Assembly: GCF_902713615.1 (NCBI RefSeq)
Contig: NC_052171.1
Span: forward strand, 23,968,324-24,032,323
Length of the DNA stretch: 64,000 nt
Direction: 5' to 3'
From: Scyliorhinus canicula
Taxonomy: Eukaryota
Shown here piece after piece: positions 8,536-63,527 of this stretch; within the stretch, counting starts at the first letter, position 1; every line of letters begins with the position of its first letter. Below the pieces are notes generated by a model, which worked only from the letters and a program-made list of their open reading frames with translations, ran no database searches and was not told where the DNA came from. The position numbers and the translations under genes were made by a program.

Positions 8536-8636
8536 CTAGTCTCCACTGGTACACTTGTGTAAGCTAAACAAGGTGATATAAATTCAGAACTTTGCTTTTC
8601 CTTCATTCAGCAAACACCACATAATTCACACTTTAC

Positions 8637-24431: not shown

Positions 24432-24658
24432 GCCCTGAAGGTGACAATGAGCAAACATCCGGACAGCTTCATGCTGCAGGGATACATGCAAGAGCTGAAA
24501 GAAAGGACAAAGGGCCAGCGGACGGTGCTGTACGATGGGCCAGTGAGGAACCTGTGCCCTCTTGCACCGAACAATGTCAACACCATGGCAGCTGCAGCTT
24601 TGGCCGGGCACAACCTGGGCTTTGAGCGGGTGCAGGGCTGCCTGGTAGCTGACCCCAG
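24432..24658 (+). CDS. ASPDH: ASPDH coding exon 5
   Basis: ccacag|GCC...AG|gtaggt, 227 nt. ALKVTMSKHPDSF...TVLYDGPVRNLCPLAPNNVNTMAAAALA...LGF..V.G.LVADP. Confidence 0.95.
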
Positions 24659-25371: not shown

Positions 25372-25520
25372 ATTTGAATGAAATGAAATGAAATGAAAAT
25401 TGCTTATTGTCACGAGTAGGCTTCAATGAAGTTACTGTGAAAAGCCCCTAGTCGCCACATTCCGGCGCCTGTCCGGGGAGGCTGGTACGGGAATCGAACC
25501 GTGCTGCTGGCCTGCTTGAT
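25372..25520 (-). mobile_element. Short tRNA-derived SINE with (CATTT)n tail
   Basis: B-box GGTTCGATTCCC on the minus strand and an (AAATG)n tail. Confidence 0.6.
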
Positions 25521-25732
25521 AATGCTGGACTGCAAGAAATCAGAGATTTGCGCATTTCTAGAGCAGTGGCCAATGACATTCAGTGATTACAAGGACCTGG
25601 GCGTGTAAGAATATGAACGGCAGAGATTTGGATGAACACAAGATTATGGAGGGTGAAAGATGGGATGCTGGTCAGGAATCATCAAGGCAGGTGCTAACAA
25701 TGTGGATGAGCACTCTGACAGCTGGTTAACTG

Positions 25733-26680: not shown

Positions 26681-26760
26681 TGATGCCTTTACTCAAGGTA
26701 TTTTCAAATCTCCTTTTGAATGAGATCTTTAATAATTTGGAATTTCTCCTGACCCTGCAG

Positions 26761-26918
26761 TCTATTGAACTTTCACGTTGTGGATATCGAAGTTACAGGT
26801 CCAGTGAACAAGTCCGCAGGGCATGAATTCACAGTGAAGACTAGCCGGAGGAATCCAGCTCCCCCAGGGGAAGTGACAGGCATGGCAACATATACTTCAT
26901 TCTGGAGCAGCGTGCTCA
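26761..26918 (+). CDS. ASPDH: ASPDH coding exon 6
   Basis: ctgcag|T...A|gtaagt, 158 nt. FHVVDIEVTGP...RRNPAPPGEVTGMATYTSFWSSVL matches human HVVDVELSGP...RENPAEPGAVTGSAT. Confidence 0.95.
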
Positions 26919-26979
26919 GTAAGTACAAGATTGGTCCTCATTCTCATCGCTTTGACTAATGCGTGGTCAAGTTTCCATA

Positions 26980-35453: not shown

Positions 35454-37250
35454 CTATAGTTTGTGACCAGCATTGAAAGAGGTCAGGTGTGGAGAGGAGT
35501 ACAGTCTGTGACGAAGAAGATTCTCATAGGATGAGCCCGCAGCCAAATGCTTGTACAGATCTAAAGGATACCCGGGGGAGCTCAGCACCTGCCCATGAAT
35601 GGCTGGGACCATGAAAGAATTTACAGTGAATGAGGGCATGTATGGTGAGTAGAGGGTCGGACTCTTCACGTGGCTCAAGTGATGCCCATAGCTGGCTGGG
35701 AAACATGTCCTCACTCCCTCGTAGAAGGCGGGATCCTGAGGCCTCAGTGTTGTTGGCAGCCAGGTAGGAACATCAGGTAACGAGGACTTTTGGTCCTTAC
35801 CATCACTAATCCTCTGGCTGTCCTTGCCATCCAGATCTTTGGCAATGAGTAGAGGGGAGACAATGCGGAGTTTCTTCCCATAGGCTGCATCCAGCTCCTT
35901 CTGGCTTCTCTGTGTGGGCTGGGAAAGTAGGCAGCTGGGGGGCCCACTCTTGACATTTGTCGGCAACACGGTGCTCTTTGCCCGCTTGGCTGGAACTCGC
36001 CGCGGGAGGGCGACACTGATGGGGGGGACCCAGCATGCTTTGGGATGGCTGTCAGAGGAAGAGGAGGCCTGGCCAGTAAATGAACTCTTCCTCAGTGGTA
36101 AGGAGCTGCTCTTGGTCTCTGTGACCCAGGACACCTGGGTCTGGTGTGTATTGACTGCGCTGGTTCGAGGGAGGCTAAGGTCTGTTGGTTGATCGTTCGA
36201 AGCGAGTGTCCTCCCATAGTGCCTTGTCAACTTGTGTGCATCAGGTGTCAGGGTGGGGACTGCAGTGCTGCTCAGCTCTCTGAAGCTTCTCTGATTGGTG
36301 CAGCAATCAAAAGGACTCCCTTTGTTGGGGTAATGGAAAAAGGGCTTCACCAGTCCGTGCATGTATGGGCTGCAACAAAAATTCCCAAAGCCCTGAGGGG
36401 CGTGGGAATGCTCAACCGCTCTTCCTTTTGGATCCCTTTCTTCCGGTGCCTTCTGGCCATCAAATGGGGTGACCCGGTCCAAGGAGTAGACGTGGTAATT
36501 GGCTGGGGTGCTGCCGAAGGGCCACTCCAAGTGGTAATCCAAGTGGCCCTGTCGCGGGGGTTGAATGTGATGAATGACAGTCGGTCTGTGAATGCTCACC
36601 TCTGGAGTGGAGCCAGAGGCAGGAGGTGAGTGCTGGACCTCACTGCTCTGTACTGACTTGGCCCCAGCAGGGGTCGAGGCGATGCCAACAGTGTTAAAGC
36701 TGAGGGATGTTGCGTCGTTGCCTTGAGCAAGGAATTTCTTTTTGGCCAAAGGGGACATTATTTCTTGGTCTCTTTTGGAGCGAAGCATGGACAGACGACT
36801 TTTATCCACCTCATGCGACAACTGTGCTGGACACTCATCCTTACTGGCCATCGATGCTTGGGGTTGGTGAGAAGCATCTCTGTCATCTTCGCAAACAGCA
36901 GTGTCCCCCCCAGACATCTCTTCCGACAGGCCCATGGCCAAATCAGCAGTGACGCAGTGTCCATTATGACCCACAACCTTGTTGCCCATCAGTGCCTTGG
37001 AGACTGCTTCTGATGAAGGGCCATTAGCATCCCGGACCTCCTCGGATATCCCATTCTCGCTGGCCCTCGTCACGTCTTGCATTGGGGACTTGGTCCCACA
37101 GCTATTCTGGAGTGAGAGTCCATTTAGTGGCTGCTCTTTAGAGTCTTCACTCCCAGTTGTAGTGTTTCTTGGGTTTGGGGACTCTTTGTCCAAAGATATT
37201 TGTTCCGTCTTATCCTTTCCTACATCTTCAGAAAGCACTTGAGGAAGTAT
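35454..37250 (-). CDS. ARID5-family transcription factor, large terminal exon
   Basis: actcag|ATA, 1797 nt to TAG. ARID5 C-terminal motifs IMSPLAKKKFLAQ, QPTDLSLP, HPKACWV, GKKLRIVSPL, YENLLRHRL, terminal HKL*. Confidence 0.92.
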   Translation of the reverse strand: MLPQVLSEDVGKDKTEQISLDKESPNPRNTTTGSEDSKEQPLNGLSLQNSCGTKSPMQDVTRASENGISEEVRDANGPSSEAVSKALMGNKVVGHNGHCVTADLAMGLSEEMSGGDTAVCEDDRDASHQPQASMASKDECPAQLSHEVDKSRLSMLRSKRDQEIMSPLAKKKFLAQGNDATSLSFNTVGIASTPAGAKSVQSSEVQHSPPASGSTPEVSIHRPTVIHHIQPPRQGHLDYHLEWPFGSTPANYHVYSLDRVTPFDGQKAPEERDPKGRAVEHSHAPQGFGNFCCSPYMHGLVKPFFHYPNKGSPFDCCTNQRSFRELSSTAVPTLTPDAHKLTRHYGRTLASNDQPTDLSLPRTSAVNTHQTQVSWVTETKSSSLPLRKSSFTGQASSSSDSHPKACWVPPISVALPRRVPAKRAKSTVLPTNVKSGPPSCLLSQPTQRSQKELDAAYGKKLRIVSPLLIAKDLDGKDSQRISDGKDQKSSLPDVPTWLPTTLRPQDPAFYEGVRTCFPASYGHHLSHVKSPTLYSPYMPSFTVNSFMVPAIHGQVLSSPGYPLDLYKHLAAGSSYENLLRHRLYSSPHLTSFNAGHKL

Positions 37251-38319
37251 CTGAGTGGGAGACACAAGGATTAATCCTTTAGCACAAGGGTAAGGAACAG
37301 CTGATAAAACAAGGTAAAGGTGAAAGTCAACATAGCTGAGAAGCAACTTTCATGTGTAGAACAAGAAGGAAGATGATGCTATTTCTACAAAGAAAGTTAA
37401 TTCACCTCAGATAATATTTATGGCCTAGAAACAGGCCATTCTGCTGAATAGGTCCATGCTGATGTTGATGCTCCATATGAGCTTCCTCCCAAAATAATAC
37501 TAATCGTAGGAACATAAGACTTAGGGTTGGCCATTTGGCCCTTCAAGTCTGCTCTCCCATTCAAAAAGATCAGGGTTGACCTGGTGGTGGTCTGAACTCC
37601 ACTTTCCTGTCTGTCCCCCCCAACTCTCAACTTCCTCATCTAATCAGAAGTCTAACTCTGCTGCCTTGAAAAAAAATCAATGATCTGGGTCTTAAATGGT
37701 CGACTTCTTATTCTTCAACTGTGTCCTAGCTCTAGTTCCCCCCCAGAAGTGGAAACATTCTCCTGGTATCAAATTCCCTCAGGATCTTCTATGTTTCAAT
37801 AAGACCCCCTCTCATTCTTTCTAAACTCCAGTGGATCTTTGCCCAGAAGATAAGCCCCTCATCCCAGGAATGAGTGGAGTGAACATTATCTGAATCTTTT
37901 GTTTCAGCTCACTGACCTTCACAGATGCTGCTGGACGCTGAGATTTTCCAGGTTTGATTTTGTTTCAGATTTCCGGCATCTGCAGAATTTTGGTTTTCTA
38001 TAGATTCGGAGCTTACTTAATTTAGATTAGGCAAGGCTGAAGTGATGAGCTAGGTTTGTTTAACAGCCTAATGAAGCAGGAATATTTGTTTAATTTGCAA
38101 TCATAATACCTTTGAGTTTCAACGTAGTGATTGAAACTGAGAAACAGAAAACAGGTTGTCAGATTCTAGGTTTAGGTATGCTTGACTTGATAGAATTAGA
38201 CATAGGGCACAATTTAACCATCGCCTTACCATGGGCACAGATCTGGGTGCGCTGGTTAAATAGCAGGAAAAGCCAAAATCGAGATTCACGCCTGGTACTA
38301 TCCAACTTGTCATCTAACC

Positions 38320-38673
38320 GGGGCAGCAGGGTAGCATGGTGGTTAGCATAAATGCTTCACAGCTCCAGGGTCCCAGGTTCGATTCCCGGCTGGGTCACTG
38401 TCTGTGCGGAGTCTGCACGTCCTCCCCCTGTGTGCGTGGGTTTCCTCCGGGTGCTCCGGTTTCCTCCCACAGTCCAAAGATGTGCGGGTTAGGTGGATTG
38501 GCCGTGCTAAATTGCCCGTAGTGTCCTAATAAAAAGTAAGGTTGGGGGGGGGGGTTGTTGGGTTACGGGTATAGGGTGGATATGTGGCTTTGAGTAGGGT
38601 GATCATGGCTCGGCACAACATTGAGGGCCGAAGGGCCTGTTCTGTGCTGTACTGTTCTATGTTCTATGTTCTA
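38320..38673 (+). mobile_element. V-SINE (HE1-like), full length
   Basis: tRNA head, V-domain, (TTCTATG)n tail. TCTAACCGG is duplicated on both sides. Confidence 0.9.
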
Positions 38674-40190
38674 ACCGGCCCCGCTCCCGGTGGCGAGTTC
38701 CAGATCTCGTCCAAATATGGCGCGCATATTGTTAACCCTCATTTGCATTAATTTCCATCTGATTAGCGAGATTGATGTTGAATGCAACGGCCTCCTGGGA
38801 ATTAACCGGCTCCCAACGAGATATCACGCGGGTGCCGTTTAGTACTTCTTTTTAAAAACGTGAAGGTGGAGCAGTGGCTGCTGAGGGGAGCTGAGGAATC
38901 ATTTCCATTTTCTGGCTCAAGGGGACCGGAGCTGCTGCCCCAGTGCTCGGCCAGGGGGTGGGGGGGCAGGGAATTGGGCTTGGTCGGGGGCCTGAAGCTT
39001 TCCAGGTCAGGCGTCACCCCTGGGCTGGGGGGGGGGGGGGGGGGGGGAGGGGGGGGGGGGGGGGGAGGGGGGGGGGGAGGAGGAGGGGGGGGGAGGGTTT
39101 TTTTCATCTGTGAGGCCTTCAAGCCATCTTTGAATATTGTAGAGAACCATAAGAGGGGCAACTACAGCTGCTGTCTGTCTGTCCCACCAAACACTTCCAG
39201 GGCAGAGCCCTGTTCCTGGTTCTATGCTGAAGGTCACTTTGACTCCCTTTGACTGTGAGCGGCCTCAAGCTTCACAGCTGAAGGCTATTGCTCATGAGAA
39301 ATTGGCGAGAGCACATCACAGCTCTCAAATGGCTTCTCATGGGTGCATGTGCCGTGTCTCGGCCGATGATTATTGCATCGCATTTCAATCAGACGTTGAA
39401 CCCAGAAGAGTCTGCCTGACCTCGTGAATCGTTAGCACCACAGAGGCAGCAGCCAACAATCAAACACTATAGAGCAGGGCTTCAGCACTGGGAAGTCCTT
39501 GCGACCATAGGGTAAGTACGGATCAGAAGAGGCCACTCGATCACAGTCTCCCTAATGTTCCCGGCAGGTATCTGGGGTCTAGGGGCTCCTGCTGTGGCCC
39601 GGGCCGAGTGTGCAGAGCAAGGTTTTCCAGCACAACTGGCTCGCTGGATGGCACTCTGAGAGAATGCGGGACACGAAAGGGTGGGGAAGGCTTGAGGGAC
39701 GTGAGGGTCCCTTACTGATTGTCAGTATCTCTCCATCTCCAATTCCTTACAGATATAATAATACAGCTGGTTATTGTCAGTTCTGCAGAGGCTGCCCTCG
39801 GTGTGCTGGTGGCAGCCCAGGCAGTCAGATGCCAGAGAAGGCAGCGGGGTCAACTCAGGCTGCAGGTGGCACCCAATGTGCACACCCTGAAGACCCTGCC
39901 GCCCATCAGACCAAGGAGGAACCCAGAGGAGGACACCAGCGACAGCTTGAGGCATTGTTGGTCATTCGAGGATATGAAGGGCAGCCTATGTCTCAGGATA
40001 CTCCGTCTCAACAAAGAGACAGTTCTCGCAAACTTGGTACCCCGTGGAGGAGGAGGACACCCGCTCTCAGTGGTTGTGAAGGACACCGAAGCCCAGAACT
40101 TCTATGCAACCGGTTCATTCCAGGGCTCCAGCAGGGACCTGTGCATCATTTCCCAAGACAGGTTCATCCGTCGCTCATGCTGTCATTGAG
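38674..40190 (+). mobile_element. PIF/Harbinger transposon remnant with transposase fragment (~39950-40190)
   Basis: LRLNKETV...LSV.VK....NFYATGSFQ....DLC.ISQ resembles the HARBI1/Harbinger transposase N-terminus. Segment 39105-39260 is shared, inverted, with 15690-15845. Confidence 0.7.
39026..39097 (+). repeat. Poly-G / GGA tract
   Basis: About 70 nt, nearly pure G. Confidence 0.9.
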
Positions 40191-40566
40191 CGGTGCATTG
40201 GAAAGGACCAAACACAACACAACACAAGTGCTATAAAATATGGGCCACAATCTCACTGTCGAGAAACACCACGCCAATCACACCCTAAATTACACTTTGC
40301 TCCCATTAAATTGTGCCCATGGACTGTCTGCAGTAAAAGGGCAAATCGATAGAAAATCAGTCGCAGAAGATGATCAAAGAATTAAATGTGACACAACCTA
40401 TTCGTAGCCCGAAGGGGCAAGGGTCAAGCGTTCTCTGGATCGCTGGCCTATGATGATGAAAGATTGCACAAACTCAGGATGTTAGTACCTGAAAGTTAGG
40501 TTGAGGAGTAATTTGATCCACATTTCAGCTCTTCAGGGGGACAGATGGGAAAGATGGAGAGAAAGT

Positions 40567-41268
40567 GGGTGGGATTTTCCAACCTCCCCCGGGTCGGAGA
40601 ATCGCCGGGGGGGGGGGGGTGAATCCTGCCCCTGCCGGCTGCCGAATTCTCTGGCACCAGAGATTTGGCGGGGGCTGAAATCGCGCCGCGCCGGTCGGTG
40701 GTCGCTGACAGCGTCCCCCCCCCCCCCCCCCCGGCGATTCTCCGGCTCGCGATGGGCCTAGTGGCTGCCTGTTTACAGCCGGTCCTGCCGGCGTAAATTA
40801 GAGTAGGTACTTACCGGCGGGACCTGGCTCCGCGGGCAGCCTTCGGGGGAATCTGGACCCGGGAGGTCACCCCATGGTGGCCTGACCCACGATCGGGAGC
40901 CACCGATCTGCGGGCGGGCCTGTGCCATGGGGGCACTCTATTCCTCGGCATCAGCTGCTGTGGACCTCTGTGATGGCCGACACGGAGATGAACACCCTTG
41001 CGCATGCGCTGGCATGATGCCAGCCCACGCTGGCATTCCCACACATGCGCCAACTCGTGTCGGCCGGCAGAGGCCCTTCAGCGTCGGTTGGCATGGCGCC
41101 AAGCCCCTTTCGCGCCGGCCCACACGGCGCAAACCACGCCGGCGCCAGCCTAGCCCCTGAAGGTGCGGAGAATTACGCACCTTCGGGGAGGCCCAATGCC
41201 GGAGTGGTTCACACCTCTCCTTCGCACCGGAGTTGCCCGGTCCCACCGAGTCCCGCAGAATCCCGTCC
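40567..41268. mobile_element. CpG-rich Harbinger-type MITE
   Basis: Termini GGGTGGGATTTTCC / GCAGAATCCCGTCC. 3-bp TSD AGT. Confidence 0.78.
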
Positions 41269-41429
41269 AGTGTTTCTGCTGTCTGTGAAATCTAGACCTC
41301 GAGAGAAGAGTCTGAGAATGACAGTAAGATAAATAACACAGAGGGTGGTCCCAGTTGGGAACTCTATCTGGCATTGATAGATTGTTGTTATGTAGAGATA
41401 TGGGATATGGGGCAATGGTGGGGATATCC

Positions 41430-41975
41430 GGGGTGGGATTCTCCGACCCCCCCTCCGCCGGGTCGGAGAATCCCCGAGGGGGCGGCGCAAATCCTACCCC
41501 GACGCCGGCTGCCGTATTGTCCGCCGCCGGCTTTCGGGCGGGGGCAGGATTCACGCCACATTGGCAGCGCCCCTCCCCCCCGGCAATTCCCCGGGCCCCA
41601 ATGGGCCGAGCGGCCCTCTGTTTTTGGCCAGTCCCGCCGCCGTGAATCCTGTACCGGTTCATGTACCGGCCGGACCTGGCAGGTAAATCGGCAGGACCGG
41701 TCCTCGTGGGGGGGGGGGGATCCGACCCCAGGGGATGCCCCAACAGTGGGGGCACTTCTTCCTTCTGCGCCGGCCCTTGTCAGGCTCTGCCACAGCAGGC
41801 ACAGAGACGAGAACCCCCCCGCCATGCGCAAAAATACGGTGGCCGCTCTGCGCATGCACGGAACCACGCCGGCCCTTCCCCGCCGGCTGGAGCGGCGCCA
41901 TCACCTCCGGGGTCCACCTAGTGCGGAGAATTTTGCATTTTCGGGGGCTGTTGACGTCACAGTGGTTGGCACCGG
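41430..41975. mobile_element. Harbinger-type MITE, one end truncated
   Basis: Starts GGGGTGGGATTCTCCGACCC. Body similar to 40567-41268 and 12280-12770. Confidence 0.7.
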
Positions 41976-42147
41976 TTGATATTGGATAGTCATGTCAGGT
42001 TCAAAATAAAGCCCATTTCTTAATCTCGTGCTACCTGCAGAGTAGCCACAGCACCTCTCATGTTACATTGTTACAAATAGAGACTGGAGATAAAGAAGCA
42101 TTGTCAACGGTCCAGGTTGGTGGAGTTAGCTAACCCCATTAACATAC

Positions 42148-42334
42148 CCCATTAGGCTCGTTGCTCTGTTGCGTGCTGTCTTTTGGCCGTTTACGTTTGC
42201 TTCTTTCTTTCTCTCCAATACTGGATCCTTTCCCCTCTTTGTTTCGAATGACATTGTACTGTTTCCGAGGCTTGAAGGCTGGCAGTGGCTTGTTCTCCTC
42301 TCCCTTCATGTGACGTTCGTACGGTAAGACCAAT
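42148..42334 (-). CDS. ARID5-family exon (end of ARID domain, basic NLS-like stretch)
   Basis: tggcag|A TTG...GGG|gtatgt, 187 nt. LVLPYERHMKGEENKPLPAFKPRKQY...RSKRKRPK. Confidence 0.93.
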
Positions 42335-42681
42335 CTGCCAGAGAGAGAGGAAGGAGGGTCAGAGCAGGTTTCCACTATGTGCCGTTTGCCCTGTGTCACT
42401 CCCTCTGCCTACTGGGCCAAGGACTGGAATGCAGATCTCTACCCCCTGGGTGTAAAAAATCCAGTTAATTTTTCCCTCAGCCAGCACCATGAATAAAAAT
42501 CTGACTGTTCATTCTTACACTTGGGGTTTGAGATCTCGATGTGCGACTCGGTTTTTCAACGTAATGGCTGGGAAATTACCAATTGGCTATCAAAGCACCT
42601 GGATATTTCAGAGTCAATACAGCTTCACTGATGGGACAGCATAGAAGGATCTTAAACTCTAAATCATGCTGTAAGACATAG

Positions 42682-43135
42682 AAAGCTCCCTCTACACTGT
42701 CCCCATCAAACACTCCCAGGACAGGTACAGCACGGGGTTAGATACTGAGTAAAGCTCCCTCTACACTGTCCCCAAACACTCCCAGGACAGGTGCAACACG
42801 GGGTTAGATACAGAGTAAAGCTCCCTCTACACTGTCCCCATCAAACACTCCCAGGACAGGTACAGCACAGGGTTAGATACAGAGTAAAGCTCCCTCTAAA
42901 CTGTCCCCATCAAACACTCCCAGGGCAGGTACAGCACGGGGTTAGACACAGAGTAAAGCTCCCTCTACACTGTCCCCATCAAACACTCCCAGGACAGGTA
43001 CAGCACAGGGTCAGATACAGAGTAAAGCTCCCTCTACACTGTCCCCATCAAACACTCCCAGGACAGGTACAGCACGGGGTTAGATACAGAGTAAAGCTCC
43101 CTCTACACTGTCCCCAAACACTCCCAGGACAGGTA
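42682..43135. repeat. 69-bp minisatellite AAAGCTCCCTCTACACTGTCCCCATCAAACACTCCCAGGACAGGTACAGCACGGGGTTAGATACAGAGT, ~6.5 copies
   Basis: Direct tandem units. A degenerate inverted monomer lies at ~47075-47145. Confidence 0.93.
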
Positions 43136-43383
43136 TCCTGCAATCCAAATAGACCCCAATTTTGGAATTTGATTGGTTGGTTGATGGGAGAGGGTACTGG
43201 GATGTGACCACTCTGTTCTGGAATTGTACAATTTAAAAGGTGGACTGTCTGATAGCAGTCGGGACTCTGAAAATACATTGACAAGGAATAATTGATGTAA
43301 GCCTGAAATTCAAATGCCGTCGCTCAGTAGTTAAGAGACACCTTCAAGTGCCTTCATCTGCTGCAAGGGTCAGTGCCACCTAC

Positions 43384-43481
43384 CTCTCGTAGTGGCGTCG
43401 GGTACATGTGGCAGCACTGGTACTCCCAGGGTTTCCACCCAGCTCGTCGTAGATGTTCTTCCAGAGGCGGCTGGTTGTAAC
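43384..43481 (-). CDS. ARID5-family exon (ARID domain core)
   Basis: ctgcag|GTT...AG|gtaggt, 98 nt. VTTSRLWKNIYDELGGNPGSTSAATCTRRHYER. Confidence 0.95.
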
Positions 43482-43714
43482 CTGCAGGTAGAAAGCACAC
43501 AGGTCCAATTGTCCCTCATGATTATAGTCCAGAGCTCACAATGAGCACCCAGTGAATCCAAATAGCAGTGCTCCAGGTTGGGAAAAATAGCACCCTGTAG
43601 AAAGTATAGAAGCTGCTCAATCGCTGCGCAAACTCACACCCTTGAGGGAAAGAAATCTATCATCTCCTCTCGGGCTTCTGTCGACACATGAATGAAATCC
43701 CAGCTACAGTTCAT

Positions 43715-44290
43715 AGGGTGACACTCTCATCTGATGTGTTTAAATCCCACTGGAGAGAGACTTGAATGGATAATTCAGGCCAATGCTCTTGCTCTCTCCC
43801 TTTGTGCAGCTGAGGGAGTGCTGCACTGTCGGAGGATGCAATGTTAAACCGAGGCCCACATTGGCCTGCAGGGGCACATGGAAAAGACTCCACGGCCACT
43901 CTTTGAAGCAGAGCAGAGGTCCTGCCTAATATTTAACCTTCATCCAACATGAGCGGCAAGGTGGCACAGTGGGTTAGCCCTGCTGCCTCACTACGCTGAG
44001 GCCCCAGGTCCCAGCTGGGTCACTGTCCGTGTGGAGTTTGCACATTCTCCCCGTGTCTGCGTGTGTTTTGCCCCCACAACCCAAAGGTGTGCAGGGTAGG
44101 TGGATTGGCCGCGCTAAATTGCCCCTTAATTGGAAAAAATAATTGGGTAATCTAAATTTAACAAAAAAACAACTTTCATCCAACATCACCAAAACAGATG
44201 ATCTCCTTCTCATCATTTGCCGTTTAGATCACTTTATCATCCCGCACAAATTGGCTGCCTAGTTTCCTGCATTGTAATTGTGACCGCGTT
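43715..44290 (+). mobile_element. Deu-domain SINE (SacSINE/AmnSINE-like) with nested short V-SINE (43953-44165)
   Basis: TGAGGGAGTGCTGCACTGTCGGAGG..TGTTAAACCGAGGCCC resembles the Deu domain. Confidence 0.6.
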
Positions 44291-46499
44291 CAGGCCCAAG
44301 GCTCATCCAGTTCACCTTCTGTCGTCCTGGTAGGTGTACAATACGACAATAATGGAGTTGTTCACTAACAAATTCAACTAAAGAGATTCAGTCTAGCTGT
44401 AGTCAGGACAATCTCCAGCCAAACAAATCTTCTAATAATAATTATCTAATCGGTAAAGCACAAATAATTATTGTATCTGGTGCAATCGGTCACAGATTTT
44501 TATATCACTAATCCTCTTCGATAAGCAAACAAATTCTTCATCAGAAGATTAAAGTAGAAAATTCTTGTTTCCAATATTAGTGGTGATAGGTTGACCCCAT
44601 TGATGTAGTATCCCTGCCTTAATAGTTTAGCAGAGGCTTTAACCTACCTATTTTTATCAGCTTGTGTCAATGCGTACTTCCTGTTACAATGCTGATCTGC
44701 ACTCACTGTTTCTCAGTAACACTTTCATTTCAATATCTGACTTTTAGAAGGGGGGATTCCCCCACTTGTGTGACAATAGTGGGCAGCCGCCATTCAGGGG
44801 TTCTAGTCAGCTAACACTGTAGGTGCTCCACACTCAGCTCCACCATCCACACCCTGGTGAGTCTCCTTTGCTCTGCATCATCCCATTCGTTTCAGCTTCC
44901 TGAAAGTTCTTTCTCCACTTTTACAACGTTCGATGACCAGATCTTATCCTCAGATCACTGTTTGCCTCCTTCATGCTTTTCTCCCTCTTAGTTACGCGCA
45001 GGACTTCACCCAGAACCCCTCGTCAAACATCGTGAACCACGCTGTGACACGTTTACTGAATATCGGCAGCGACAATTCCCAGACTCCAGGGAGGGAGCCA
45101 GTGCTGGTTTGTCCTCTGTGGAGGAGTTTGCTTCAGTCTGAGCATGCTGTCTTCAAACTGTATCGACCCTGCTGAGGTTACACCTGGAGTCTGCAAACAA
45201 TTCTCATCTCACTATTTGAAAAGGGAGAATATATTATCACAAGGTGCAGAGAAACAAGAACCCATCCCTTTCTTACCCCAAAGAACTTCAAAGTCAATGA
45301 AGATTTTTTGAAGTGTTGTCACTGATGAAATGTCAGAAATGGGTCAGCCAATTCACACATAGTAAGATCCCAAAAACAATTAGATAATGTCCAAATCATC
45401 TGCTTCACTGGCATTGGTTGCAAAATATTATGGTGATGTTCACAATATAGACCAGTTGGATATAAGAAAGTTGTGTTGCCATGTATAGGTGCTCACTTTT
45501 TAAATTAAGGGCAGGGCAACAGAATGGGTAGTGGAGCGGGAAATCTTTTCACTAGAGGTCTGTGGCAGTGTGGAATAGATTGGCGGCACTGGGGTGGATC
45601 AAAGAACCATAATGGGCTTTGTGCAACTCTACACCAGATTCTGGTCAACAGATTGGATCCAGGGTGATCAGGAAAGTACCAACGGATGACTATGATTAGG
45701 AAGGCTAGATGGACCAAAAGGTGCCTGAAGTACTATTTGTAACAGTTAGAGTATCTTCTCACTTCATGTCTTCATCATACATCATTTGATGAGTAACAGA
45801 TTATCTGAAAAGCTAAAGAACAACTTAGATTTTGAACTCAATTGCCTGTCACTGACAAAGAATGCTTTTTATTTTGTTTTATTCGTTCATGGGCGTCGCT
45901 GGCTGGGCCAGCATTTATTGCCCATCCCCGAGGGTATTTACGAGTCAATCACATTGCTGTGGGTCACAGGTAGGCCGACTAAGTAAGGGCAACAGATTTC
46001 CTTCCTTAACATGACAGACCACCGTCCCTTTCTTATACATGGGTTGCGCAGAGGATGTCTTTGCTCTCACAAGTGAGTGATATGGGACCCATATTGAGGC
46101 TCAGCCCAATGAGAGAGAACAGTCTTTTGGCTGACAAAGGAATAATACAAACTACAGAATCTAGCTGATCCAAAGGGGAGTTTTACATGAACCAGGTGGG
46201 TCTTTACAACAATCAACAATGGTTTGATTTAGGTTTTTAATTCCAGATTTTTATTGAATTCAAATTTCACCACCTGCAATGGTGAAATTTGAACCTGGGT
46301 CCCCAGAGCATTAGATTGGGTTTCTGGATTACTAATCTAGCGTCAATACCAGTAGGTCACTTCCTCTCCTCATAGTGCAAATACAGATCAGCTAGCGGAT
46401 CGTGTGTGCCCTTCATGAGCCATCTCGGTGAGCTATCTCATGCTGATGTCTTTATCCAATCCCCTTTGTATCGCACTGCTTTCGACTGACTGTCACCTC

Positions 46500-46665
46500 T
46501 ATAGAACAGTACAGCACAGAACAGGCCCTTCGGCCCTCGATGTTGTGCCGAGCAATGATCACCCTACTTAAACACACGTAACCCGTATACCCGTAACCCA
46601 ACAATCCCCCCATTAACCTTACACTACGGGCAATTTAGCATGGCCAATCCACCTAACCCGCACAT
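46500..46665 (-). mobile_element. V-SINE 3' half
   Basis: Tail and linker identical to other copies. Confidence 0.85.
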
Positions 46666-48849
46666 TCTGCCCCTTGCCTCAGAGGCCTCGGAAATACCTG
46701 CACACCTCGCCACTCACTTGGTAAATTACTTTTCCCATAGAAATCAGTCGGAAATGTCTGTTTCAGACTCTTTACGGTGTTAAAACCTTTTCTTCCAGTT
46801 CACAGTGACAAGGAAACAAGCAATCCTGACGCTGATTGACAATACTTTAGACTGCAGCATCAATCCGCATTTAGATACCAAGGGACCACAGAATTCGGTG
46901 TCAGCATCAGACTAGCTGATCATTCAAGCAGTAAAAAAGGTTGTGATGTTCCTCCTGGGGCAGAAGAGGACAGAATAGAGATTGCTGAAGGTTTTTGAGT
47001 GGTTGGCCATTTCATTCTCTGATGTTGAGTCCACTGACAGTCTGAATGGATCTGTTCACATGGATCAGTGTGTCGTCCGTGCTGTACCTACCCTTGGAGT
47101 GTTTGACGTCACACTGTAGAGGGAATCTGACTTTGTATCTTACATGTGATGTTCCTTCCCAGGGACTTGCTATTAATGAAATGTGCAAAATATATCACAC
47201 CCCCCCCCCCTCCCCCCACCAACCACGACACCCCTAAAAGGGAAAACACAGGGATCTACCCACGCACCAGAAGCACAAACATGCGGGTGCAAATAGAACA
47301 GTTCCAGCTTCTTGTGTCTCACATCAGAAAGTAGAGAGAAAGAGCCAGAGCCAGAGCCTGATGATGTGCTCCCCACTCTCCCGAAATGCTGCTGACAGCA
47401 GTTTCTTATTTATATCCTCTGCTCAACGCAGATGGAGCAGCTGCTAAAAATTGTGCTTTTGCTGCAAATCTTACAGTGATCACCTGCCGAGGGAGGGAGA
47501 CCAAGGAGACAGCAGTGACATTGTCCCCAGCTGTCATCGTGCTGCTCAGAAGATGCTACAGCTGTAAAATGTCAGAGAGGAAAGAGAAGATAATGGACTT
47601 TCTAAACTGGGACTGGGGTGGATCATCCAGACCATAGCTTCCTGGATACTGAGTGGGTGCCTGTTTAGTACATCCCTCCCCATACACAAGGAATCTGATG
47701 CACAGATAGGAATAGAGGCCAAGAGGTTGACAGCCACTGCCTGAAGAACACTGACAGATCCCTCTGAAAGGCACAGCCGCTGGTCCCAAACAAAGGGATC
47801 TTCTCCTCTCTATTTCCCACAGAGGTGCACGTAGAATAATTTGAATTGAAAGTAAACAGGTTTCACAAACAATTGGGCTGATATAAGCCATAGACTGACC
47901 AAGAGGGGTGGGTGCAGAATCCCGGGACTGCGAAGGCACTTCTCCCCTGGGAGCTGAACAGCCTTCAGGCTGAATGGAGAGAAGACTGGGTCCTGCCAAA
48001 TCAGAGTCTGGTTTACTAACAGATAGATTCACGTGAGTACTGTTGTTTCAGAACAGGCAGGAGCTGATTGCTGCCAGCTCTGGAGTCCGACATCCCATTT
48101 CCTCTGCTCGGCAAGCTGAATACTTCAAGAGATAGATATATTGCTACAATGCCAAAAAATACCTCAATAAAATGTTTATTAAAAAAAAAGAGAAGATTGC
48201 TGACAACATTGATGCCTCTTGGCAATTCTGAGCTGAGGAATCCTGGGAACAAGAGCTTGGATGTGTACCCATGACCTGGAGTTGAAAGGCCAAGGTTCAA
48301 TCTCTAACTGGAATGCAGAGATTTAGATCCAGCTGCATTCAAAGCCAGTTTAGTGAGAGGAGAGTTGGACCAATCAAGACTGACTGGTGAAAGGAGGCCT
48401 TTGTGGCCCTGTGTTTTTCTTAGATGGGAACTCAATTCCTGGAGGGACAGGGCAGAGCTGAAACCCATTACTTCAGTTTCTAATTCAAAGAGTTCAGAAC
48501 ATTCTTTCCAATATGTCGTCCACACAGGTCAAGGTTGCCAATTCTGATTGAACATCTGCCAGGAGATTTGGTCACATGGCTAAATGCCGCCATGCTGGTC
48601 ACCTGACACATCTGTCCTGGAGATGCACCTCCCACTTTCCGCACCAATTAGAAATGGTAAGATTTCCCTTTGGCCACATAGATAATTCTCAAGAGTCCAT
48701 CAAATTGTCTTGCTCGCTTCCCCCACTATTTTTATGACTAAAGCAAAATGGCCAATGATTTTTCACCAAGCAATGCCCTGGAGATTAATCTTCAAGTCCT
48801 GGAGACTCCAAAGAAATCCTGGAGGATTGTCAATCTTAATGCAAAGGGA

Positions 48850-49335
48850 GTAAAAGAAAGGCAACTTGAAAGTTCCGAGGAACAAAGGGACCTTGGTGTG
48901 TTGTCCATAGATCTCTGAAGGCAGAAGGGCAGGTTAATAGGGTGGTGGAAAAGGCATGTGGGACACTCGTTTTTATCAATCAGGGCATAGATTACAAAAG
49001 CAGGGAGGCCATGATGGAGCCATATAGCACTTTGGTGAAGCCACAGCTGGAGCACTGTGTGCAATTCTGGTCACCACATTACAGGAAGGATGTGATTGCA
49101 CTGGAGGGGGTGTAGAGGATATTCACCAGGATGTTGCCTGGGTTGGAACATTTAAGTTATGAAGAGAGGTTGGATAGGGTTGTTTTCTCTAGAGCAGAGA
49201 AGACTGAAGGGTGACCTGATCGAAGTGGACAAGATTATGAGGGGCATGGACAGGATGGATAGGGAGCAGATGTTTCCCTTAGTTGAAGTTAAGAGGGGAC
49301 ACAAGTTCAAGGTGAGGCGCAGAAGGTTTAGCGGT
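48850..49335 (+). mobile_element. CR1-type LINE 3' fragment
   Basis: EQRDLGV...LVKPQLEHCVQFWSPHYRKDV..LE.V...GLFSLEQRRLKGDLIEV. Confidence 0.85.
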
Positions 49336-49619
49336 GAATTTGGCAGTTAAAATACTGATTTTCCCAAGCTGAATCCTTCTTTTCCTTTGCATGATGTCCC
49401 GCAGAATATTTGTATCCTGCCCATTGCCCTTTGTCCATAATCGTTCTGCTCTGTTGACCTGGAATGTCTCTCAACATAATGTATCCTGGTCGGTTCTGCC
49501 ATATACATATCGATAGATAGAGAAATACAGCACAGAACAGGCCCTTCGGCCCACGATGTTGCGCCAAACTTTTGTCCTAGGTTAATCATAGAATTTTCTG
49601 CTGGCAAGATCTTCTGGTC

Positions 49620-49880
49620 TCACTAAAGTGCAGAAGGATGCCATTCGGCCCTTCGAGTCTGCACCGACCCTCTGAAAGAGCACCCCACCCAGGACCATTC
49701 CCCCTCCCTCTTCCTTCAACTCCGTAACCCCACCTAACCTTTGGACTGTGGGAGGAAACCGGAGCACCCAGAGGAAACCCACGCGGACAGGTGGAGATGG
49801 TGCAAACTCCACACAGCGTCACCCAAATCGAACCCTGGCGCGGTGATGCAGCAGTGCTAACCACTGTGTCACTATGCCGC
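49620..49880 (-). mobile_element. V-SINE, older copy
   Basis: V-domain and tRNA head. Confidence 0.8.
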
Positions 49881-50039
49881 TCTAATACTGATTGCATTTC
49901 AAAATCAAACATTTCCCCACATGCCATGCCATCACAACTGGTCAGGGTCAGTCTCTTATTGAAATGCCGTGATTGGATTCAAAGAAAGGAAAATGCAATG
50001 GAGCATTACAATTGAACATTCCCTCATCATATACGTGCC

Positions 50040-51750
50040 AAACAGCAGAGCAGCGTGTAGTGATCTCACAATTAACGGATCAGATCTGAGCTCTGCAGTC
50101 CTACCACATCCAGTTGTGGGTGGTGGTGGAGATCATTAAACAACTAACAGGAGGAGGCTCCATGAATATCCCCACCTTCAATGATGGAAGCCCAGCACAC
50201 CAGTGCAAAGGCCAATACACTTGCAACTATCTTCAACCAAACATCTCACGGGGATGATCCATTTCGGCCTCCTCCAGATGTCACCAGCACAGATGCCAGC
50301 ATTCAGCCAATTCAATCTGCCCCACGCGGTATCAAGAAACAACTGAAGGCACTGGATACTGCCAAGGCTATGGGCCCTGATACCATTCTGGCAAAAATAC
50401 TAAACACCTGAGCTGCAGAACGAGCTCTTAGCCAAGTTGTTCGGGTACAATTACAGTTACAGAATTCTACCCAGCAACATGGAGAATTGCCCAGGCATGT
50501 CCTATATATAAAAGGCAGGACAAATTCAACCTGACCAATTCCTACTCCATCAGTCTCCTCTCGATGAGCAGTGAAGTGATGGGCGGGATCCTCAGCAGTA
50601 ATATCAGGCAGCACTTACTCAGTAATATCCCGCTCACTGATGCTCAGTTCTGGTTCTGCCACAGCCACTTGGCTGCTGATTGCATTACCGCCATTGGTCC
50701 AAACATGAACAAATGAATGAAACAGGTGATATGAGTGTGCCCTTGACATCAAGGCAGCATTTGATTGTGTATGTCATCAAGGAGCCCTAGCAAAAAAGGA
50801 GTCAATGGAAATAAGGGAGAAAACTGTCCACTGGTTACCTAACGCAAAGCAAGATGGTTGTGGTGGTTGAAAGTCAATCATTTTAGCCCCAGGAGTTCCT
50901 CAGAGTAGTGCCCTTGGCCCAAACGTCTTCAGCTGCTTCACCAATGACCTTCCTTCACCATTTAAAAAAAATTTTAGATTACCCAATTATTTTTTCCAAT
51001 TAAGGGGCAATTTAGTGTGGCCAATCCACCTACTCTGCACATTTTTGGGTTGTGGGGGCGAAACCCACGCAGACACGGGGAGAATGTGCAAACTCCACAC
51101 GGACAGTGACCCAGAGCCGGGATCGAACCTGGGACCTCAGCGCCGTGAGGCAGCTGTGCTAACCACTAGGCCACCGTGCTGCCCTGACCTTCCTTCATCA
51201 TAAGGTCAGAAGTGGGGATGTTTGCTGGTAATTGCACAATGTTCAGCACCATTTGTAATATGTCAGATAATGCAGCACTATGTGTCCATATGCAGCAAGA
51301 CCTGGAGAATATTCGGGCTTGGTCTGACAAGTGGCAAGTTACATTTGTGCCATATAAGTGCCAGGCAATGACTATCTCCAGCACGAGAGAATCTAATCAT
51401 CTACCCTTGACATCCTGGAGGTTAGCATTGACCAGAAACTGGACTAAACTAGCCACAAAACACTGTGGCTATAAGGGCAGGTCAGAGGCTGAGAGTTTTG
51501 CAGCGAGCAACTCACCTCCTGACTCTCCAAAGCCTGTCCACCATCTACAAGGCACAAGTCAGGAGTGTGATGGAATACTCTCCACTTGCCTGGATGAGTG
51601 CAGCTCCAACAACACTCAAGATGCTCAACACCATCCAGGACAAAGCAGCCCCGCTTGACTGGATTGCCATCCATGAACTTAAGCATTTACTCTCTTCACC
51701 ACTGATACAGCCAGCAGCCGTGTGTGCCAACTACAAGATGGAGCCATTCA
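50040..51750 (+). mobile_element. Non-LTR retrotransposon RT remnant (CR1/L2-group), interrupted by a SINE
   Basis: KAMGPD.I, PISLLS, ALDIKAAFD, GVPQ.S.LGP..F..F.NDLP, MFA, QQDL..I..W...WQV.F, YKAQVRSVMEY. Confidence 0.8.
50962..51184 (-). mobile_element. Short V-SINE with TSD
   Basis: Flanked by TGACCTTCCTTCA(C/T)CAT at 50945 and 51185. Confidence 0.9.
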
Positions 51751-52674
51751 CCAAACATTCGCCAACAGTATCCCCCACCCCCACCCCAAACCATATGGTT
51801 GGCAGAGGTTCAAGAATGCAGCTCACAGCCACATTCTCAAGGGCAATTGCGGATGGGAAATGGCACCCACATCATGTTTTAAAAAATATAAAAGCCTTCC
51901 TTCCTCATGAGATCTAAGCAGAGAGGGGAAAAGGAAATCAGAAAGATATTTCAAGAACCTGAACATTTCTTCTCTGGCCCCTCAAGTGATCATTAATCAC
52001 TTAAATGTTTCCTGCCATTTAACAAAAAAGGTGCATTCCATGAGGGTCACATTCATGGGTAAACTGTCGTACCTAAATTATTTTTGGCATGGGTGCCAAA
52101 GGATTTAACAGCATTGTAACGATTATTCCTCCACTTGCAACTGGACAAGTCCATTTCCAATTCCCCCCTCCACGTATCTCTACTCTTTACTGTCAACTAC
52201 AGAACGTCTGATCCAGGCAGTTATCCCTTGCATCCCAAGGAGCATTCACAGGAGCATTATCAGATCAAACTTGGCACTGAGCCACATTAACCAATATTAG
52301 GACAGACTGTCAAATGCTTGGTCTACGAATGTATTTTAATGAGCGTCTTAAAGATGGTGAGAGTCCCAGTGAGACAGAGAGGTTTGTGTAAGGAGTTACA
52401 AGGTTAGGGTTTGAGCCTCGGTAGCTGAAGCCTCAGCTGCAATGTCGAATGAAGGAAATCGGGAATGCGTGAGATGTTGATTCAACTCTACTTCGGTTTT
52501 ACCACAAAATCTTTAAAGACAGTGGATTTCAAGGTTTGACTGATGCTTATCTTGTCTTTGGGAGGTTAAGTATCAGCTGTCCAACAGGTTGACAAGATTA
52601 ACAAGGCAAAACCAGCAATCGATATTTTAATGGGATTGCAGATGGACAGTGGCCTCATCTTTACCCAGTGGAAG

Positions 52675-53018
52675 ATAGAACAGTACAGCACAGAACAGGC
52701 CCTTCGGCCCTCAATGTTGTGCCGAGCCCTGATCACCCTACTCAAACCCCACGTATCCACCCTATACCCGTAACCCAACAACCCCCCCCCCCCCCCCCTT
52801 ACTTTTATTAGGACACTACGGGCAATTTAGCATGGCCAATCCACCTAACCCGCACATCTTTGGACTGTGGGAGGAAACCGGAGCACCCGGAGGAAACCCA
52901 CGCACACAGGGGGAGGACGTGCAGACTCCGCACAGACAGTGACCCAGCCGGGAATCGAACCTGGGACGCTGGAGCTGTGAAGCATTTATGCTAACCACCA
53001 TGCTACCCTGCTGCCCCC
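52675..53018 (-). mobile_element. V-SINE (HE1-like), ~40 bp downstream of an ARID5 splice donor
   Basis: Full head, V-domain, tail. Confidence 0.9.
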
Positions 53019-53059
53019 AGATAATCCTGAATTGGTGCTGAATAGAAAGATTTACTTAC

Positions 53060-53112
53060 TGCTTCGTAACCACCCAGCTTCTCGACTGCTTTGTACAGCG
53101 TCAATAGGTTAA
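53060..53112 (-). CDS. ARID5-family exon (ARID domain)
   Basis: ttacag|TT...GCA|gtaagt, 53 nt. (V)NLLTLYKAVEKLGGYEA. Confidence 0.93.
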
Positions 53113-53419
53113 CTGTAAAGAGAAAAAGATTCACAATGTCAGCAAGATTCAAAACGTCCAATCTGGTGAATTGCAAAATGATGAAAAGTCACGCAGTTCA
53201 CCTTGTATCGTCCATGCAGCAGGAGTTTACAGAAATTCTGGGACAATTTATAATCTGATTTAGACCTGGCCCTCCAGGAGAACTCTCGGTCCCTCCTATC
53301 CGTTCTCACAAGCCTGGCCTTCAATTCCAGGCCCACATCAGTGGGACATGGAATATTAATTGTAATTCAGAGCAATGGGGATGGATAATAAATTCCACCG
53401 GTAAGATCAAATATCAGCC

Positions 53420-53850
53420 TTGGCTCTGGGTGGCATTCTTTCCTCTGAGTCGACGGATGTGAATTCAAGGCCTCCTCTCAAGTGATTTAAACCCATAACC
53501 TATGCTAACACTCCCTGAGCAGCACTGAGGGAGTGCTGCACAGTTTGAGGTGTCTTCTTTTGGATGAGATGTCAAACTAAGGGCCCTGGCTCCCATCTCA
53601 ATAGAAGAAAGATCACACGATACTATTCATAGAAGAACATTCTTTGTGCCCTGAACAATGTTCATCCCCAAACCAACATTCAAAACAGATAATTATCAGA
53701 TTCTATTATGGAATCTTGCTGTGCGCAAATGGGCTTCTGTGTTTCCTATCTTGCAATAGGACCTACACTTCAAAAGTACTACATTGGGTGTAAAGTGTTA
53801 TGGGTTGTCCTGAGGTTGGGAAAGGTGCTGAATAAATGCAAATCTTTTTA
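53420..53850 (+). mobile_element. Deu-domain SINE, degenerate
   Basis: CACTGAGGGAGTGCTGCACAGTTTGAGGTGTCTTCTTTTGGATGAGATGTCAAAC, with an L2-like 3' tail (...ATAAATGCAAATCTTTT). Confidence 0.6.
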
Positions 53851-54009
53851 CTTTTTCATTGGGTTTGTGATGGAAGCATTGTCCGTCCAATGCAGAGAGA
53901 TATATCTCAATCTGCGACGCTGCCCTATCTTCTCAGCATCTGGACTGACAGGCAGCTCCTGCAAATCCAGTGGCTTCCAACCATTACTCAAAGGATGGAT
54001 GAAACTCAC

Positions 54010-54199
54010 CTTGCTTAAACCCCAAGTGCGGGATTCTCTCGATGGGAGTGCCCCTCTCCTTCATAAACTTGTACAGATCAACAAGGAAGTTCTGCTGCCC
54101 CAAGTCGCTGGGCGCCAGATCCTTCACCTCGAGGATCTCTCCATCCATTCCACTGTCCTCTACCAGTGCAGTGGGAAATTCTTTCAATTCGCATTGCAT
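54010..54199 (-). CDS. ARID5-family exon (start of ARID domain)
   Basis: ttccag|ATG...G|gtgagt, 190 nt. QQNFLVDLYKFMKERGTPIERIPHLGFKQ. The five exons total 2325 nt in frame. The true start may lie in an upstream exon. Confidence 0.93.
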
Positions 54200-63515: not shown

Positions 63516-63527
63516 GACCAGACAGAG

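What the first reader, a model, noticed from the sequence alone, without database searches (positions are those of the whole stretch)
35454..54199. ARID5 gene with mixed ARID5A/ARID5B character: possible third ARID5 paralogue
Seen: the ARID domain has ARID5A-type residues (PHLGFKQ, YKAVEKLG, RLWKN, LVLPY.RH.KGE, PRKQY). The tail has QPTDLSLP (36174-36188), which I recall from ARID5B, and GGNPGS is also 5B-type. The usual INLW is VNLL. Known: human ARID5A (2q11) and ARID5B (10q21) do not neighbour ASPDH (19q13). Inference: either an ancestral-type ARID5A or a separate ohnologue lost in mammals. I recall a fish gene named arid6 that should be compared.
Basis: partly seen in the sequence, partly recalled or inferred. 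Interest (0 to 1): 0.7.

Follow-up and report, generated by a model that had tools for sequence, protein, structure and literature searches.

The report
Catshark ARID5A gene, misnamed ARID5B-like
This is the small-spotted catshark's ordinary ARID5A gene (a nucleic-acid-binding regulator), which keeps some old family features that bony vertebrates lost; it is not a new third ARID5 gene, although sharks do carry a different third one elsewhere.

Summary
A five-exon, 774-aa ARID5-type gene lies on the minus strand at 54199-35454 in Scyliorhinus canicula. All splice sites are canonical, and one junction appears in transcript-like contigs from two studies.

In maximum-likelihood trees the shark, ray and chimaera proteins form one clade. 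That clade is sister to bony-vertebrate ARID5A (99/92 on the ARID domain, 100/98 on 389 conserved columns), and ARID5B is the next branch out. The clade's internal branching follows the species tree.

The tail shares KACWV, KKLRxVSP and LRHRL motifs with ARID5A only. The "ARID5B-like" traits (PTDLSLP, GGNPGS, V in VNL) are ancestral states. They also occur in paddlefish ARID5A, in a long ARID5B-like clade, or (GGNPGS only) in invertebrates.

Fish arid6 is a separate, more distant clade. Chondrichthyans have three ARID5 loci: this ARID5A-type gene, true ARID5B, and a long ARID5B-like gene (catshark copy P0309, on another chromosome). No second ARID5A-type gene was seen in any chondrichthyan.

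Immediate synteny differs. Elasmobranchs have ASPDH downstream, whereas gar, paddlefish and milkfish have COX5B. Wider synteny could not be tested directly.

Verdict: a mis-named ARID5A orthologue, and ordinary. The scan's notes cover this stretch only; it was not found before on other DNA.

The parts
54010..54199 (-). Coding exon 1: start ATG and the beginning of the ARID domain, ending ...PHLGFKQ (phase 1 donor)
   Evidence: Pfam ARID hit on this piece, E 3e-4. Homologous exon found in gar, milkfish, skate and paddlefish loci.
53060..53112 (-). Coding exon 2 (VNLLTLYKAVEKLGGYEA)
   Evidence: AG/GT sites; matches P0002.
43384..43481 (-). Coding exon 3 (RLWKN...GGNPGS...RRHYE)
   Evidence: 85-86% amino-acid match to the same exon in gar and skate.
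42148..42334 (-). Coding exon 4: end of the ARID domain (LVLPYERHMKGE, PRKQY) and a basic linker. Met122 here is the start of the annotated ARID-less isoform X2.
   Evidence: The junction to exon 5 is seen in contigs of runs X1 and X2.
35454..37250 (-). Coding exon 5: 598-aa tail plus stop. Motifs: SPLAKKK (36755-36735), PTDLSLP (36191-36168), KACWV (36041-36027), KKLRIVSP (35876-35853), LYKHL and LRHRL (35558-35502).
   Evidence: No Pfam family on this piece.
38288..38840 (.). Highly repeated SINE-like element inside intron 4; not part of the gene product
   Evidence: Enormous read and contig depth only here. The same pseudo-ORF recurs many times in the window.
40400..42000 (.). GC-rich stretch in intron 4. 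It is made of copies of a dispersed repeat and is not shown to be a promoter island.
   Evidence: GC 0.60. 70-72% matches to 12300-12750 and shorter 71-85% matches to 16140-16470.
17130..26956 (+). Neighbouring ASPDH gene (exons at about 17130-17330, 20119-20292, 20814-20945, 22911-23174, 24282-24659, 26753-26956), tail-to-tail with the ARID gene
   Evidence: tblastn matches to the skate ASPDH gene in L004. The same arrangement is annotated in S. torazame and Leucoraja.
8610..8936 (-). First coding exon (S0 segment) of a Slo-family potassium-channel gene, head-to-head with ASPDH
   Evidence: phmmer hits to BK channel alpha chains, E 2.5e-5. An earlier scan note, s1-236513, reads it as Slo3/KCNU1-like; this was not re-tested here.

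Best explanation
The gene is the catshark orthologue of ARID5A, annotated under the misleading name 'ARID5B-like'.

It encodes an N-terminal ARID (AT-rich interaction) nucleic-acid-binding domain at about aa 35-135. A long tail follows, with no recognised domain fold. That tail carries short conserved motifs.

By inference from mammalian ARID5A, the ARID domain binds AT-rich DNA and structured RNA, and the tail motifs recruit partners. This function was not tested here.

The 'mixed 5A/5B' look is retention of ancestral ARID5 states that bony-vertebrate ARID5A later lost: the PxDLS-like PTDLSLP motif, Asn in GGNPGS, and Val in VNL.

The ASPDH neighbour reflects a local rearrangement. It arose either in the elasmobranch lineage or in the bony-vertebrate lineage, on the ancestral chromosome that also gave human 2q11.
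For: - ARID-domain search: after sharks, rays and chimaera, all of the best 120 hits are bony-vertebrate ARID5A.
- ARID-domain tree (99 rows): chondrichthyan clade 100/95, joined to bony ARID5A at 99/92, then to ARID5B at 97/86. Branching inside the clade follows the species tree: chimaera, then rays plus sharks.
- Tree on 389 conserved full-length columns: chondrichthyans plus ARID5A 100/98. Placing them outside 5A+5B gives p-AU 0.04.
- Motifs: KACWV is in 12/14 chondrichthyan and 16/28 ARID5A proteins, and in 0/16 ARID5B. KKLRxVSP is likewise absent from ARID5B; LRHRL nearly so (1/16). PTDLSLP is also in paddlefish ARID5A and in long ARID5B-like proteins, so it is ancestral.
- Diagnostic columns: the chondrichthyan state equals 5A in 9, equals 5B in 1, neither in 1.
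- Architecture: the ARID domain starts near residue 35, as in ARID5A; in ARID5B it starts near residue 320.
- Other chondrichthyan genes already fill the other family slots. True ARID5B is present (P0417, P0414, P0422, P0320, P0129). The long ARID5B-like gene is present, including catshark P0309 on a 244-Mb chromosome, against 24.9 Mb for this gene.
- Milkfish has ARID5A-COX5B-SLD5/GINS4 in a row. This joins a 2q11 marker to an 8p11 marker. 2p/8p is treated as one arm of a fourfold paralogon (PMC2211742). ARID5A's 2q11 is assigned to that arm from my own knowledge. A Slo neighbour of KCNU1 (8p11) type would therefore be compatible.
Against: - Immediate synteny does not match. ASPDH is downstream in catsharks and skate. 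COX5B is downstream in gar, milkfish and paddlefish. No COX5B or GINS4 is in the window.
- Raw ARID-core identity barely separates the two families: 75-79% to ARID5A and 74-75% to ARID5B.
- AU tests do not formally reject grouping with ARID5B: p 0.22 on the domain and 0.07 on the blocks.
- A tree cannot exclude a sister paralogue with reciprocal loss.
- The Slo neighbour's identity as KCNU1-like rests on another agent's note.
Confidence: 0.85

Rival explanations
1. Hidden paralogy. The chondrichthyan gene is a sister paralogue of ARID5A. It arose before the split of cartilaginous and bony vertebrates. Each lineage then kept a different copy.
For: The immediate neighbours differ: ASPDH against COX5B. 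The stem branches are long on both sides: 0.37 for the chondrichthyan clade and 0.19 for bony ARID5A.
Against: - It needs an extra duplication after the 5A/5B split, plus two reciprocal losses.
- No lineage holds both copies: none among the 120 listed of 1233 ARID hits, nor among 150 representatives.
- The clade sits exactly where an orthologue should.
- The other family lineages are already accounted for.
Confidence: 0.09
2. As the NCBI name suggests, it is a truncated duplicate of ARID5B that is specific to cartilaginous fishes.
For: It carries the PTDLSLP and GGNPGS states seen in ARID5B. AU tests do not reject grouping with ARID5B at the 0.05 level. Tail hits to ARID5B reach 28% identity over 72-75% of the query.
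Against: - The best trees join it to ARID5A with 99/92 and 100/98 support.
- Holding it with ARID5B costs 8.5 and 20.5 log-likelihood units.
- It lacks the roughly 320-aa N-terminal arm of ARID5B.
- Its tail motifs are found in ARID5A, not in ARID5B (LRHRL in 1/16).
- The shared ARID5B traits are ancestral states.
Confidence: 0.04
3. It is the shark orthologue of fish arid6, or of the long ARID5B-like gene.
For: None beyond family membership.
Against: - arid6 forms its own clade (96/84) and is only 58-65% identical in the ARID core. It has none of the tail motifs.
- The catshark has its own long ARID5B-like gene, P0309, on another chromosome.
Confidence: 0.01

Closest known systems
ARID5A of bony vertebrates (human 2q11.2; gar P0029, paddlefish P0120, coelacanth P0126)
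   Same: - ARID domain near the N-terminus, 75-79% identical in the core.
- Same exon pattern: small ARID exons followed by one large terminal exon.
- Shared tail motifs: SPLAKKK, KACWV, KKLRxVSP, LRHRL.
- Sister position in the trees.
   Different: - The tail is longer: 774 aa against about 590 aa in mammals.
- It keeps PTDLSLP, GGNPGS and VNL.
- The downstream neighbour is ASPDH, not COX5B.
ARID5B (human 10q21.2; S. torazame P0417, stingray P0129/P0422)
   Same: ARID core 74-75% identical. It shares SPLAKKK, PTDLSLP, GGNPGS and a LYxHL motif near the C-terminus.
   Different: ARID5B has a roughly 320-aa N-terminal arm and is about 1200 aa long. It lacks KACWV and KKLRxVSP. It forms a separate clade that includes its own chondrichthyan members.
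Fish arid6 (Paramormyrops P0178, Polymixia P0198; lungfish P0191, axolotl P0196, caecilian P0206)
   Same: Short N-terminus before the ARID domain, and a similar overall length.
   Different: It is a distinct clade with long branches. The ARID core is only 58-65% identical. It has none of the ARID5A or ARID5B tail motifs. In Paramormyrops it lies next to a drebrin-like gene.
Long 'ARID5B-like' gene of cartilaginous and ray-finned fishes (catshark P0309, Callorhinchus P0173, alligator gar P0201)
   Same: ARID5-type domain; PTDLSLP in the chondrichthyan members and GGNPGS in most.
   Different: It is about 1200 aa long, with the ARID domain near residue 350. The core is 63-69% identical. It forms a separate clade. 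In the catshark it lies on a different chromosome.

Membership tests
ARID5A orthology group | ARID/BRIGHT domain of ARID5 type close to the N-terminus | tested here: met
   Pfam ARID matches on the exon 1 and exon 3 pieces. PF01388 is on record for the orthologue P0002. The domain lies at aa 25-150 of 772.
ARID5A orthology group | Groups with ARID5A rather than other ARID5 lineages in a tree, at the position expected from the species tree | tested here: met
   99/92 on the domain tree and 100/98 on 389 columns. Alternative placements cost about 20 log-likelihood units, with p-AU 0.07 and 0.04.
ARID5A orthology group | ARID5A-specific tail motifs (KACWV, KKLRxVSP, LRHRL) | tested here: met
   All three are present at aa 580, 635 and 755. 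KACWV and KKLRxVSP are absent, and LRHRL nearly so (1/16), from ARID5B. All three are absent from the long ARID5B-like and arid6 proteins.
ARID5A orthology group | Only ARID5A-type gene in its genome (one-to-one) | tested here: inconclusive
   No second chondrichthyan ARID5A-type protein was seen among the listed hits. However, only the best 120 or 150 hits were shown, and the genome itself could not be searched.
ARID5A orthology group | Conserved synteny with the ARID5A locus | tested here: inconclusive
   The immediate neighbour test is not met: ASPDH here, COX5B in gar, milkfish and paddlefish. Wider linkage is only inferred, from milkfish ARID5A-COX5B-GINS4 and the 2p/8p paralogon arm.
ARID5A orthology group | Binds AT-rich DNA and stem-loop RNA (for example Il6 mRNA stabilisation in mammals) | not testable with these tools
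ARID5B | Long N-terminal arm before the ARID domain, total length about 1200 aa | tested here: not met
   The ARID domain starts at aa 35 or so in a 774-aa protein. In ARID5B proteins it starts at about 260-360.
ARID5B | Falls in the ARID5B clade | tested here: not met
   The ARID5B clade (100/99) excludes it and holds its own stingray member.
arid6 | Falls in the arid6 clade | tested here: not met
   The arid6 clade (96/84) lies apart. Names come, the tree.

The most novel reading that the evidence does not exclude
The chondrichthyan gene is not the one-to-one orthologue of ARID5A. Instead it is an ancient sister copy, kept only in cartilaginous fishes beside ASPDH and a second Slo channel gene. 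The copy beside COX5B was kept only in bony vertebrates. On this reading the ARID5 family once had one more member than is recognised.
Probability: 0.08. Interest if true: 0.4.

Novelty: already known. Interest (0 to 1): 0.2.

Why it matters
The main value is for annotation. The same gene is called "ARID5B-like" in sharks and "ARID5A-like" in rays, which would mislead comparative work on ARID5A. ARID5A is an immune regulator of mRNA stability in mammals.

The shark protein also shows what the ancestral ARID5A tail looked like. It had a PxDLS-type motif that tetrapod and teleost ARID5A have lost.

The wider family picture is a modest contribution to vertebrate gene-family history. It comprises four old lineages: ARID5A, ARID5B, a long ARID5B-like gene, and arid6. 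The last two are absent from mammals.

Tried and rejected
- **Failed look-ups.** Encoding-contig look-ups found nothing for P0001, P0023 and P0173, because only the longest isoform is on record.
- **Scan notes.** They held nothing on COX5B or other ARID genes in this genome, and places outside the window cannot be asked for.
- **COX5B and GINS4 in the window.** tblastn of pieces from gar, milkfish and paddlefish found nothing.
- **ASPDH in bony fishes.** Its location could not be looked up. No ASPDH exon is long enough to pass the protein search's length filter, and spliced proteins cannot be given by reference.
- **AU test on the ARID domain alone.** It lacks power (p 0.22).
- **Drebrin-like genes beside arid6 and the long ARID5B-like gene.** Comparing the flanks held for them gave no cross matches, so it is not shown that they are the same gene.
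- **Papers on arid6.** They only list it among expressed genes; none treats its evolution.
- **Slo1 against Slo3.** The one Slo exon tested (8610-8936) cannot tell them apart.
- **GC-rich stretch in intron 4.** I considered it as an internal promoter island. It is made of dispersed repeat copies.
Full report
**What is there**

The window comes from Scyliorhinus canicula. The large terminal ORF is 100% identical to the NCBI protein [quoted passage not shown] of that species (P0001).

I rebuilt the gene on the minus strand from the sequence. It has five coding exons: 54199-54010, 53112-53060, 43481-43384, 42334-42148 and 37250-35454. All introns have AG/GT ends, and the product is 774 aa. P0001 is an exact suffix of this product. 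The cloudy-catshark orthologue P0002 (772 aa) is 732/772 identical.

Contigs from two public runs of two studies join 42148 directly to 37250, with GT..AG on the minus strand. The spliced form therefore exists, although those runs are only guessed to be RNA.

QPTDLSLP lies at 36191-36168.

**Which ARID5 gene it is**

A search with the ARID region returned sharks, rays and chimaera first. NCBI names the sharks "5B-like", the rays "5A-like", and the chimaera protein is unnamed. After them came only bony-vertebrate ARID5A, at 75-83% identity.

A search of 1.8 billion cluster representatives gave 150 family members. I named thirty of them through cluster look-ups.

A careful maximum-likelihood tree of the ARID domain (99 rows) shows:
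- a chondrichthyan clade (100/95) that is sister to bony-vertebrate ARID5A (joint node 99/92);
- ARID5B (100/99) as the next branch (97/86);
- three further groups: arid6, a long "ARID5B-like" clade, and invertebrate ARID5 proteins.

Inside the chondrichthyan clade the order is chimaera, then rays plus sharks. Inside ARID5A it is lobe-finned against ray-finned. Orthologues would show exactly this pattern.

Using 389 conserved columns of the full-length proteins, the chondrichthyan plus ARID5A grouping has 100/98 support. Forcing the clade to ARID5B costs 20.5 log-likelihood units (p-AU 0.07). Forcing it outside 5A+5B costs 20.6 units (p-AU 0.04). On the domain alone the AU test has little power (p 0.22).

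Raw ARID-core identity hardly separates the two families: 75-79% to ARID5A against 74-75% to ARID5B. This explains the inconsistent automatic names.

**The "mixed character"**

- KACWV occurs in 12/14 chondrichthyan and 16/28 ARID5A proteins, and in no ARID5B, long ARID5B-like, arid6 or invertebrate protein.
- KKLRxVSP and LRHRL behave in the same way.
- GGNPGS also occurs in the long ARID5B-like proteins and in invertebrates.
- VNL also occurs in paddlefish and chimaera.

These three traits are therefore old family states that the shark gene kept.

Among columns where ARID5A and ARID5B are each nearly fixed but differ, the chondrichthyan state equals ARID5A in 9, ARID5B in 1, and neither in 1.

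The ARID domain begins near residue 35, as in ARID5A. In ARID5B it begins near residue 320.

**How many ARID5 genes sharks have**

The last protein search used the chimaera long ARID5B-like protein. It shows that the catshark has its own long copy (P0309, 1223 aa). That copy lies on a 244-Mb chromosome, whereas the window's gene lies on a 24.9-Mb one.

Several chondrichthyans also have a true ARID5B: S. torazame P0417, Leucoraja P0414, Hypanus P0422 and P0129, and Callorhinchus P0320. The catshark's own ARID5B was not listed separately. It is probably merged into the S. torazame cluster, but I did not verify this.

Cartilaginous fishes therefore have three ARID5 loci, and the window holds the ARID5A-type one. 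No second ARID5A-type protein from any chondrichthyan appeared.

**arid6**

The proteins named arid6 (Polymixia, Paramormyrops, Brienomyrus) cluster with unnamed or misnamed lungfish, axolotl and caecilian proteins. Together they form their own long-branched clade (96/84).

They are 58-65% identical to the window's ARID core and carry none of the tail motifs. The window's gene is not arid6.

**Synteny**

The gene is tail-to-tail with ASPDH in the window, in S. torazame and in the little skate. This adjacency is therefore shared by sharks and skates.

In gar, milkfish and paddlefish the gene in that position is COX5B. COX5B lies about 1 Mb from ARID5A on human 2q11 (my own knowledge). No COX5B or GINS4 sequence is in the window.

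Two points weaken this as evidence for a separate paralogue.
- **Milkfish order.** It is ARID5A-COX5B-SLD5/GINS4. GINS4 is an 8p11 gene in human (my own knowledge).
- **Paralogon arm.** 2p/8p is treated as a single arm of the fourfold NK-linked paralogon: 2p/8p, 4p, 5q and 10q (PMC2211742). That ARID5A's 2q11 belongs to this arm is my own assignment. ARID5B lies on the 10q arm.

The Slo-family gene beyond ASPDH was read by an earlier agent of this scan as Slo3/KCNU1-like (note s1-236513). Human KCNU1 is at 8p11 and KCNMA1 at 10q22. If that reading holds, the shark block fits the ARID5A arm. I did not re-test that identity, so this step is inference.

arid6 in Paramormyrops lies beside a 737-aa gene with a Cofilin_ADF domain, which looks like drebrin. 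The long ARID5B-like gene in a knifefish lies between a RAP80/UIMC1-type gene and another Cofilin_ADF gene. In chimaera it lies beside a gene with Sema and B4GALT-type domains. These are hints of a 5q35-type region, based on Pfam labels only.

**Why hidden paralogy is unlikely**

The tree puts the shark clade inside the ARID5A/ARID5B pair, on the ARID5A side. A separate paralogue in that position would need one more duplication after the 5A/5B split and before the shark/bony-vertebrate split. It would then also need reciprocal loss in both lineages. No genome sampled holds both copies.

I give orthology 0.85, hidden paralogy about 0.09, and an ARID5B-derived copy about 0.04.

**How it probably works**

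All of this is inferred, not tested. The ARID domain is highly conserved, 85-96% identical within elasmobranchs and 84% to chimaera. It should bind AT-rich DNA and, as shown for mammalian ARID5A, structured RNA.

The 640-aa tail has no Pfam domain. It keeps short islands that are likely docking sites. PTDLSLP fits the PxDLS pattern known for CtBP co-repressor binding; that link is my speculation.

The annotated isoform X2 starts at Met122 in exon 4. It would lack most of the ARID domain.

**Verdict**

This is a real, intact and apparently expressed gene that is already annotated. It is best read as ARID5A with an ancestral-type tail. The "third paralogue" idea is not supported for this gene. 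Fishes do have other ARID5 lineages that mammals lack, but elsewhere in the genome. Interest is low.

Noticed in passing
outside the window: proteins P0309, P0173, P0168, P0201, P0204, P0250, P0192; locus L005 10001-17479; locus L007 10001-64525: There is a distinct long 'ARID5B-like' lineage of about 1200 aa, with the ARID domain near residue 350. It is present in sharks, rays, chimaera, gars, sturgeons and paddlefish, and some teleosts. A lamprey protein (P0170) lies nearby. The lineage is separate from true ARID5B and absent from the tetrapods sampled. In a knifefish it lies between a RAP80/UIMC1-type gene and a drebrin-like gene.
   Followed up: partly
outside the window: proteins P0178, P0198, P0191, P0196, P0206; locus L002 10001-13289: The arid6 clade is not restricted to teleosts. 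Lungfish, axolotl and caecilian proteins (unnamed, or called ARID5A-like) fall in it. In Paramormyrops it lies just downstream of a drebrin-like gene. arid6 and the long ARID5B-like gene may therefore flank the same gene, but this was not shown.
   Followed up: partly
window 61030-61140: This stretch is single-copy in the window. It lies about 6.8 kb upstream of the ATG exon. It is 75% identical over 110 bases to a stretch at the matching distance and orientation upstream of the skate orthologue (L004 3451-3560). It is a candidate conserved regulatory element.
   Followed up: partly
window 38288-38840, with many other copies (e.g. 6120-6350, 8087-8404, 12082-12525, 52816-53001, 56434-56658): A very abundant SINE-like repeat. 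It has an open pseudo-frame and very high depth in transcript-like contigs and RNA reads. It also gives matches in the skate locus.
   Followed up: no
window 40400-42000, 12300-12750, 16140-16470: A GC-rich dispersed repeat (GC about 0.60). It creates long spurious ORFs on both strands inside intron 4 of the ARID gene and near ASPDH.
   Followed up: partly
window 63259-64000 and 1-432: Tandem repeats at both window ends give long repetitive ORFs: a repeat with an LSTDPLTVQHS-type unit at the high end, and a proline/histidine-rich one at the low end.
   Followed up: no
protein P0099: A Muscovy duck entry named CNNM4 carries an ARID5A-type domain. It is probably a fused gene model, and it fits CNNM4 and ARID5A being close neighbours in birds as in human.
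   Followed up: no
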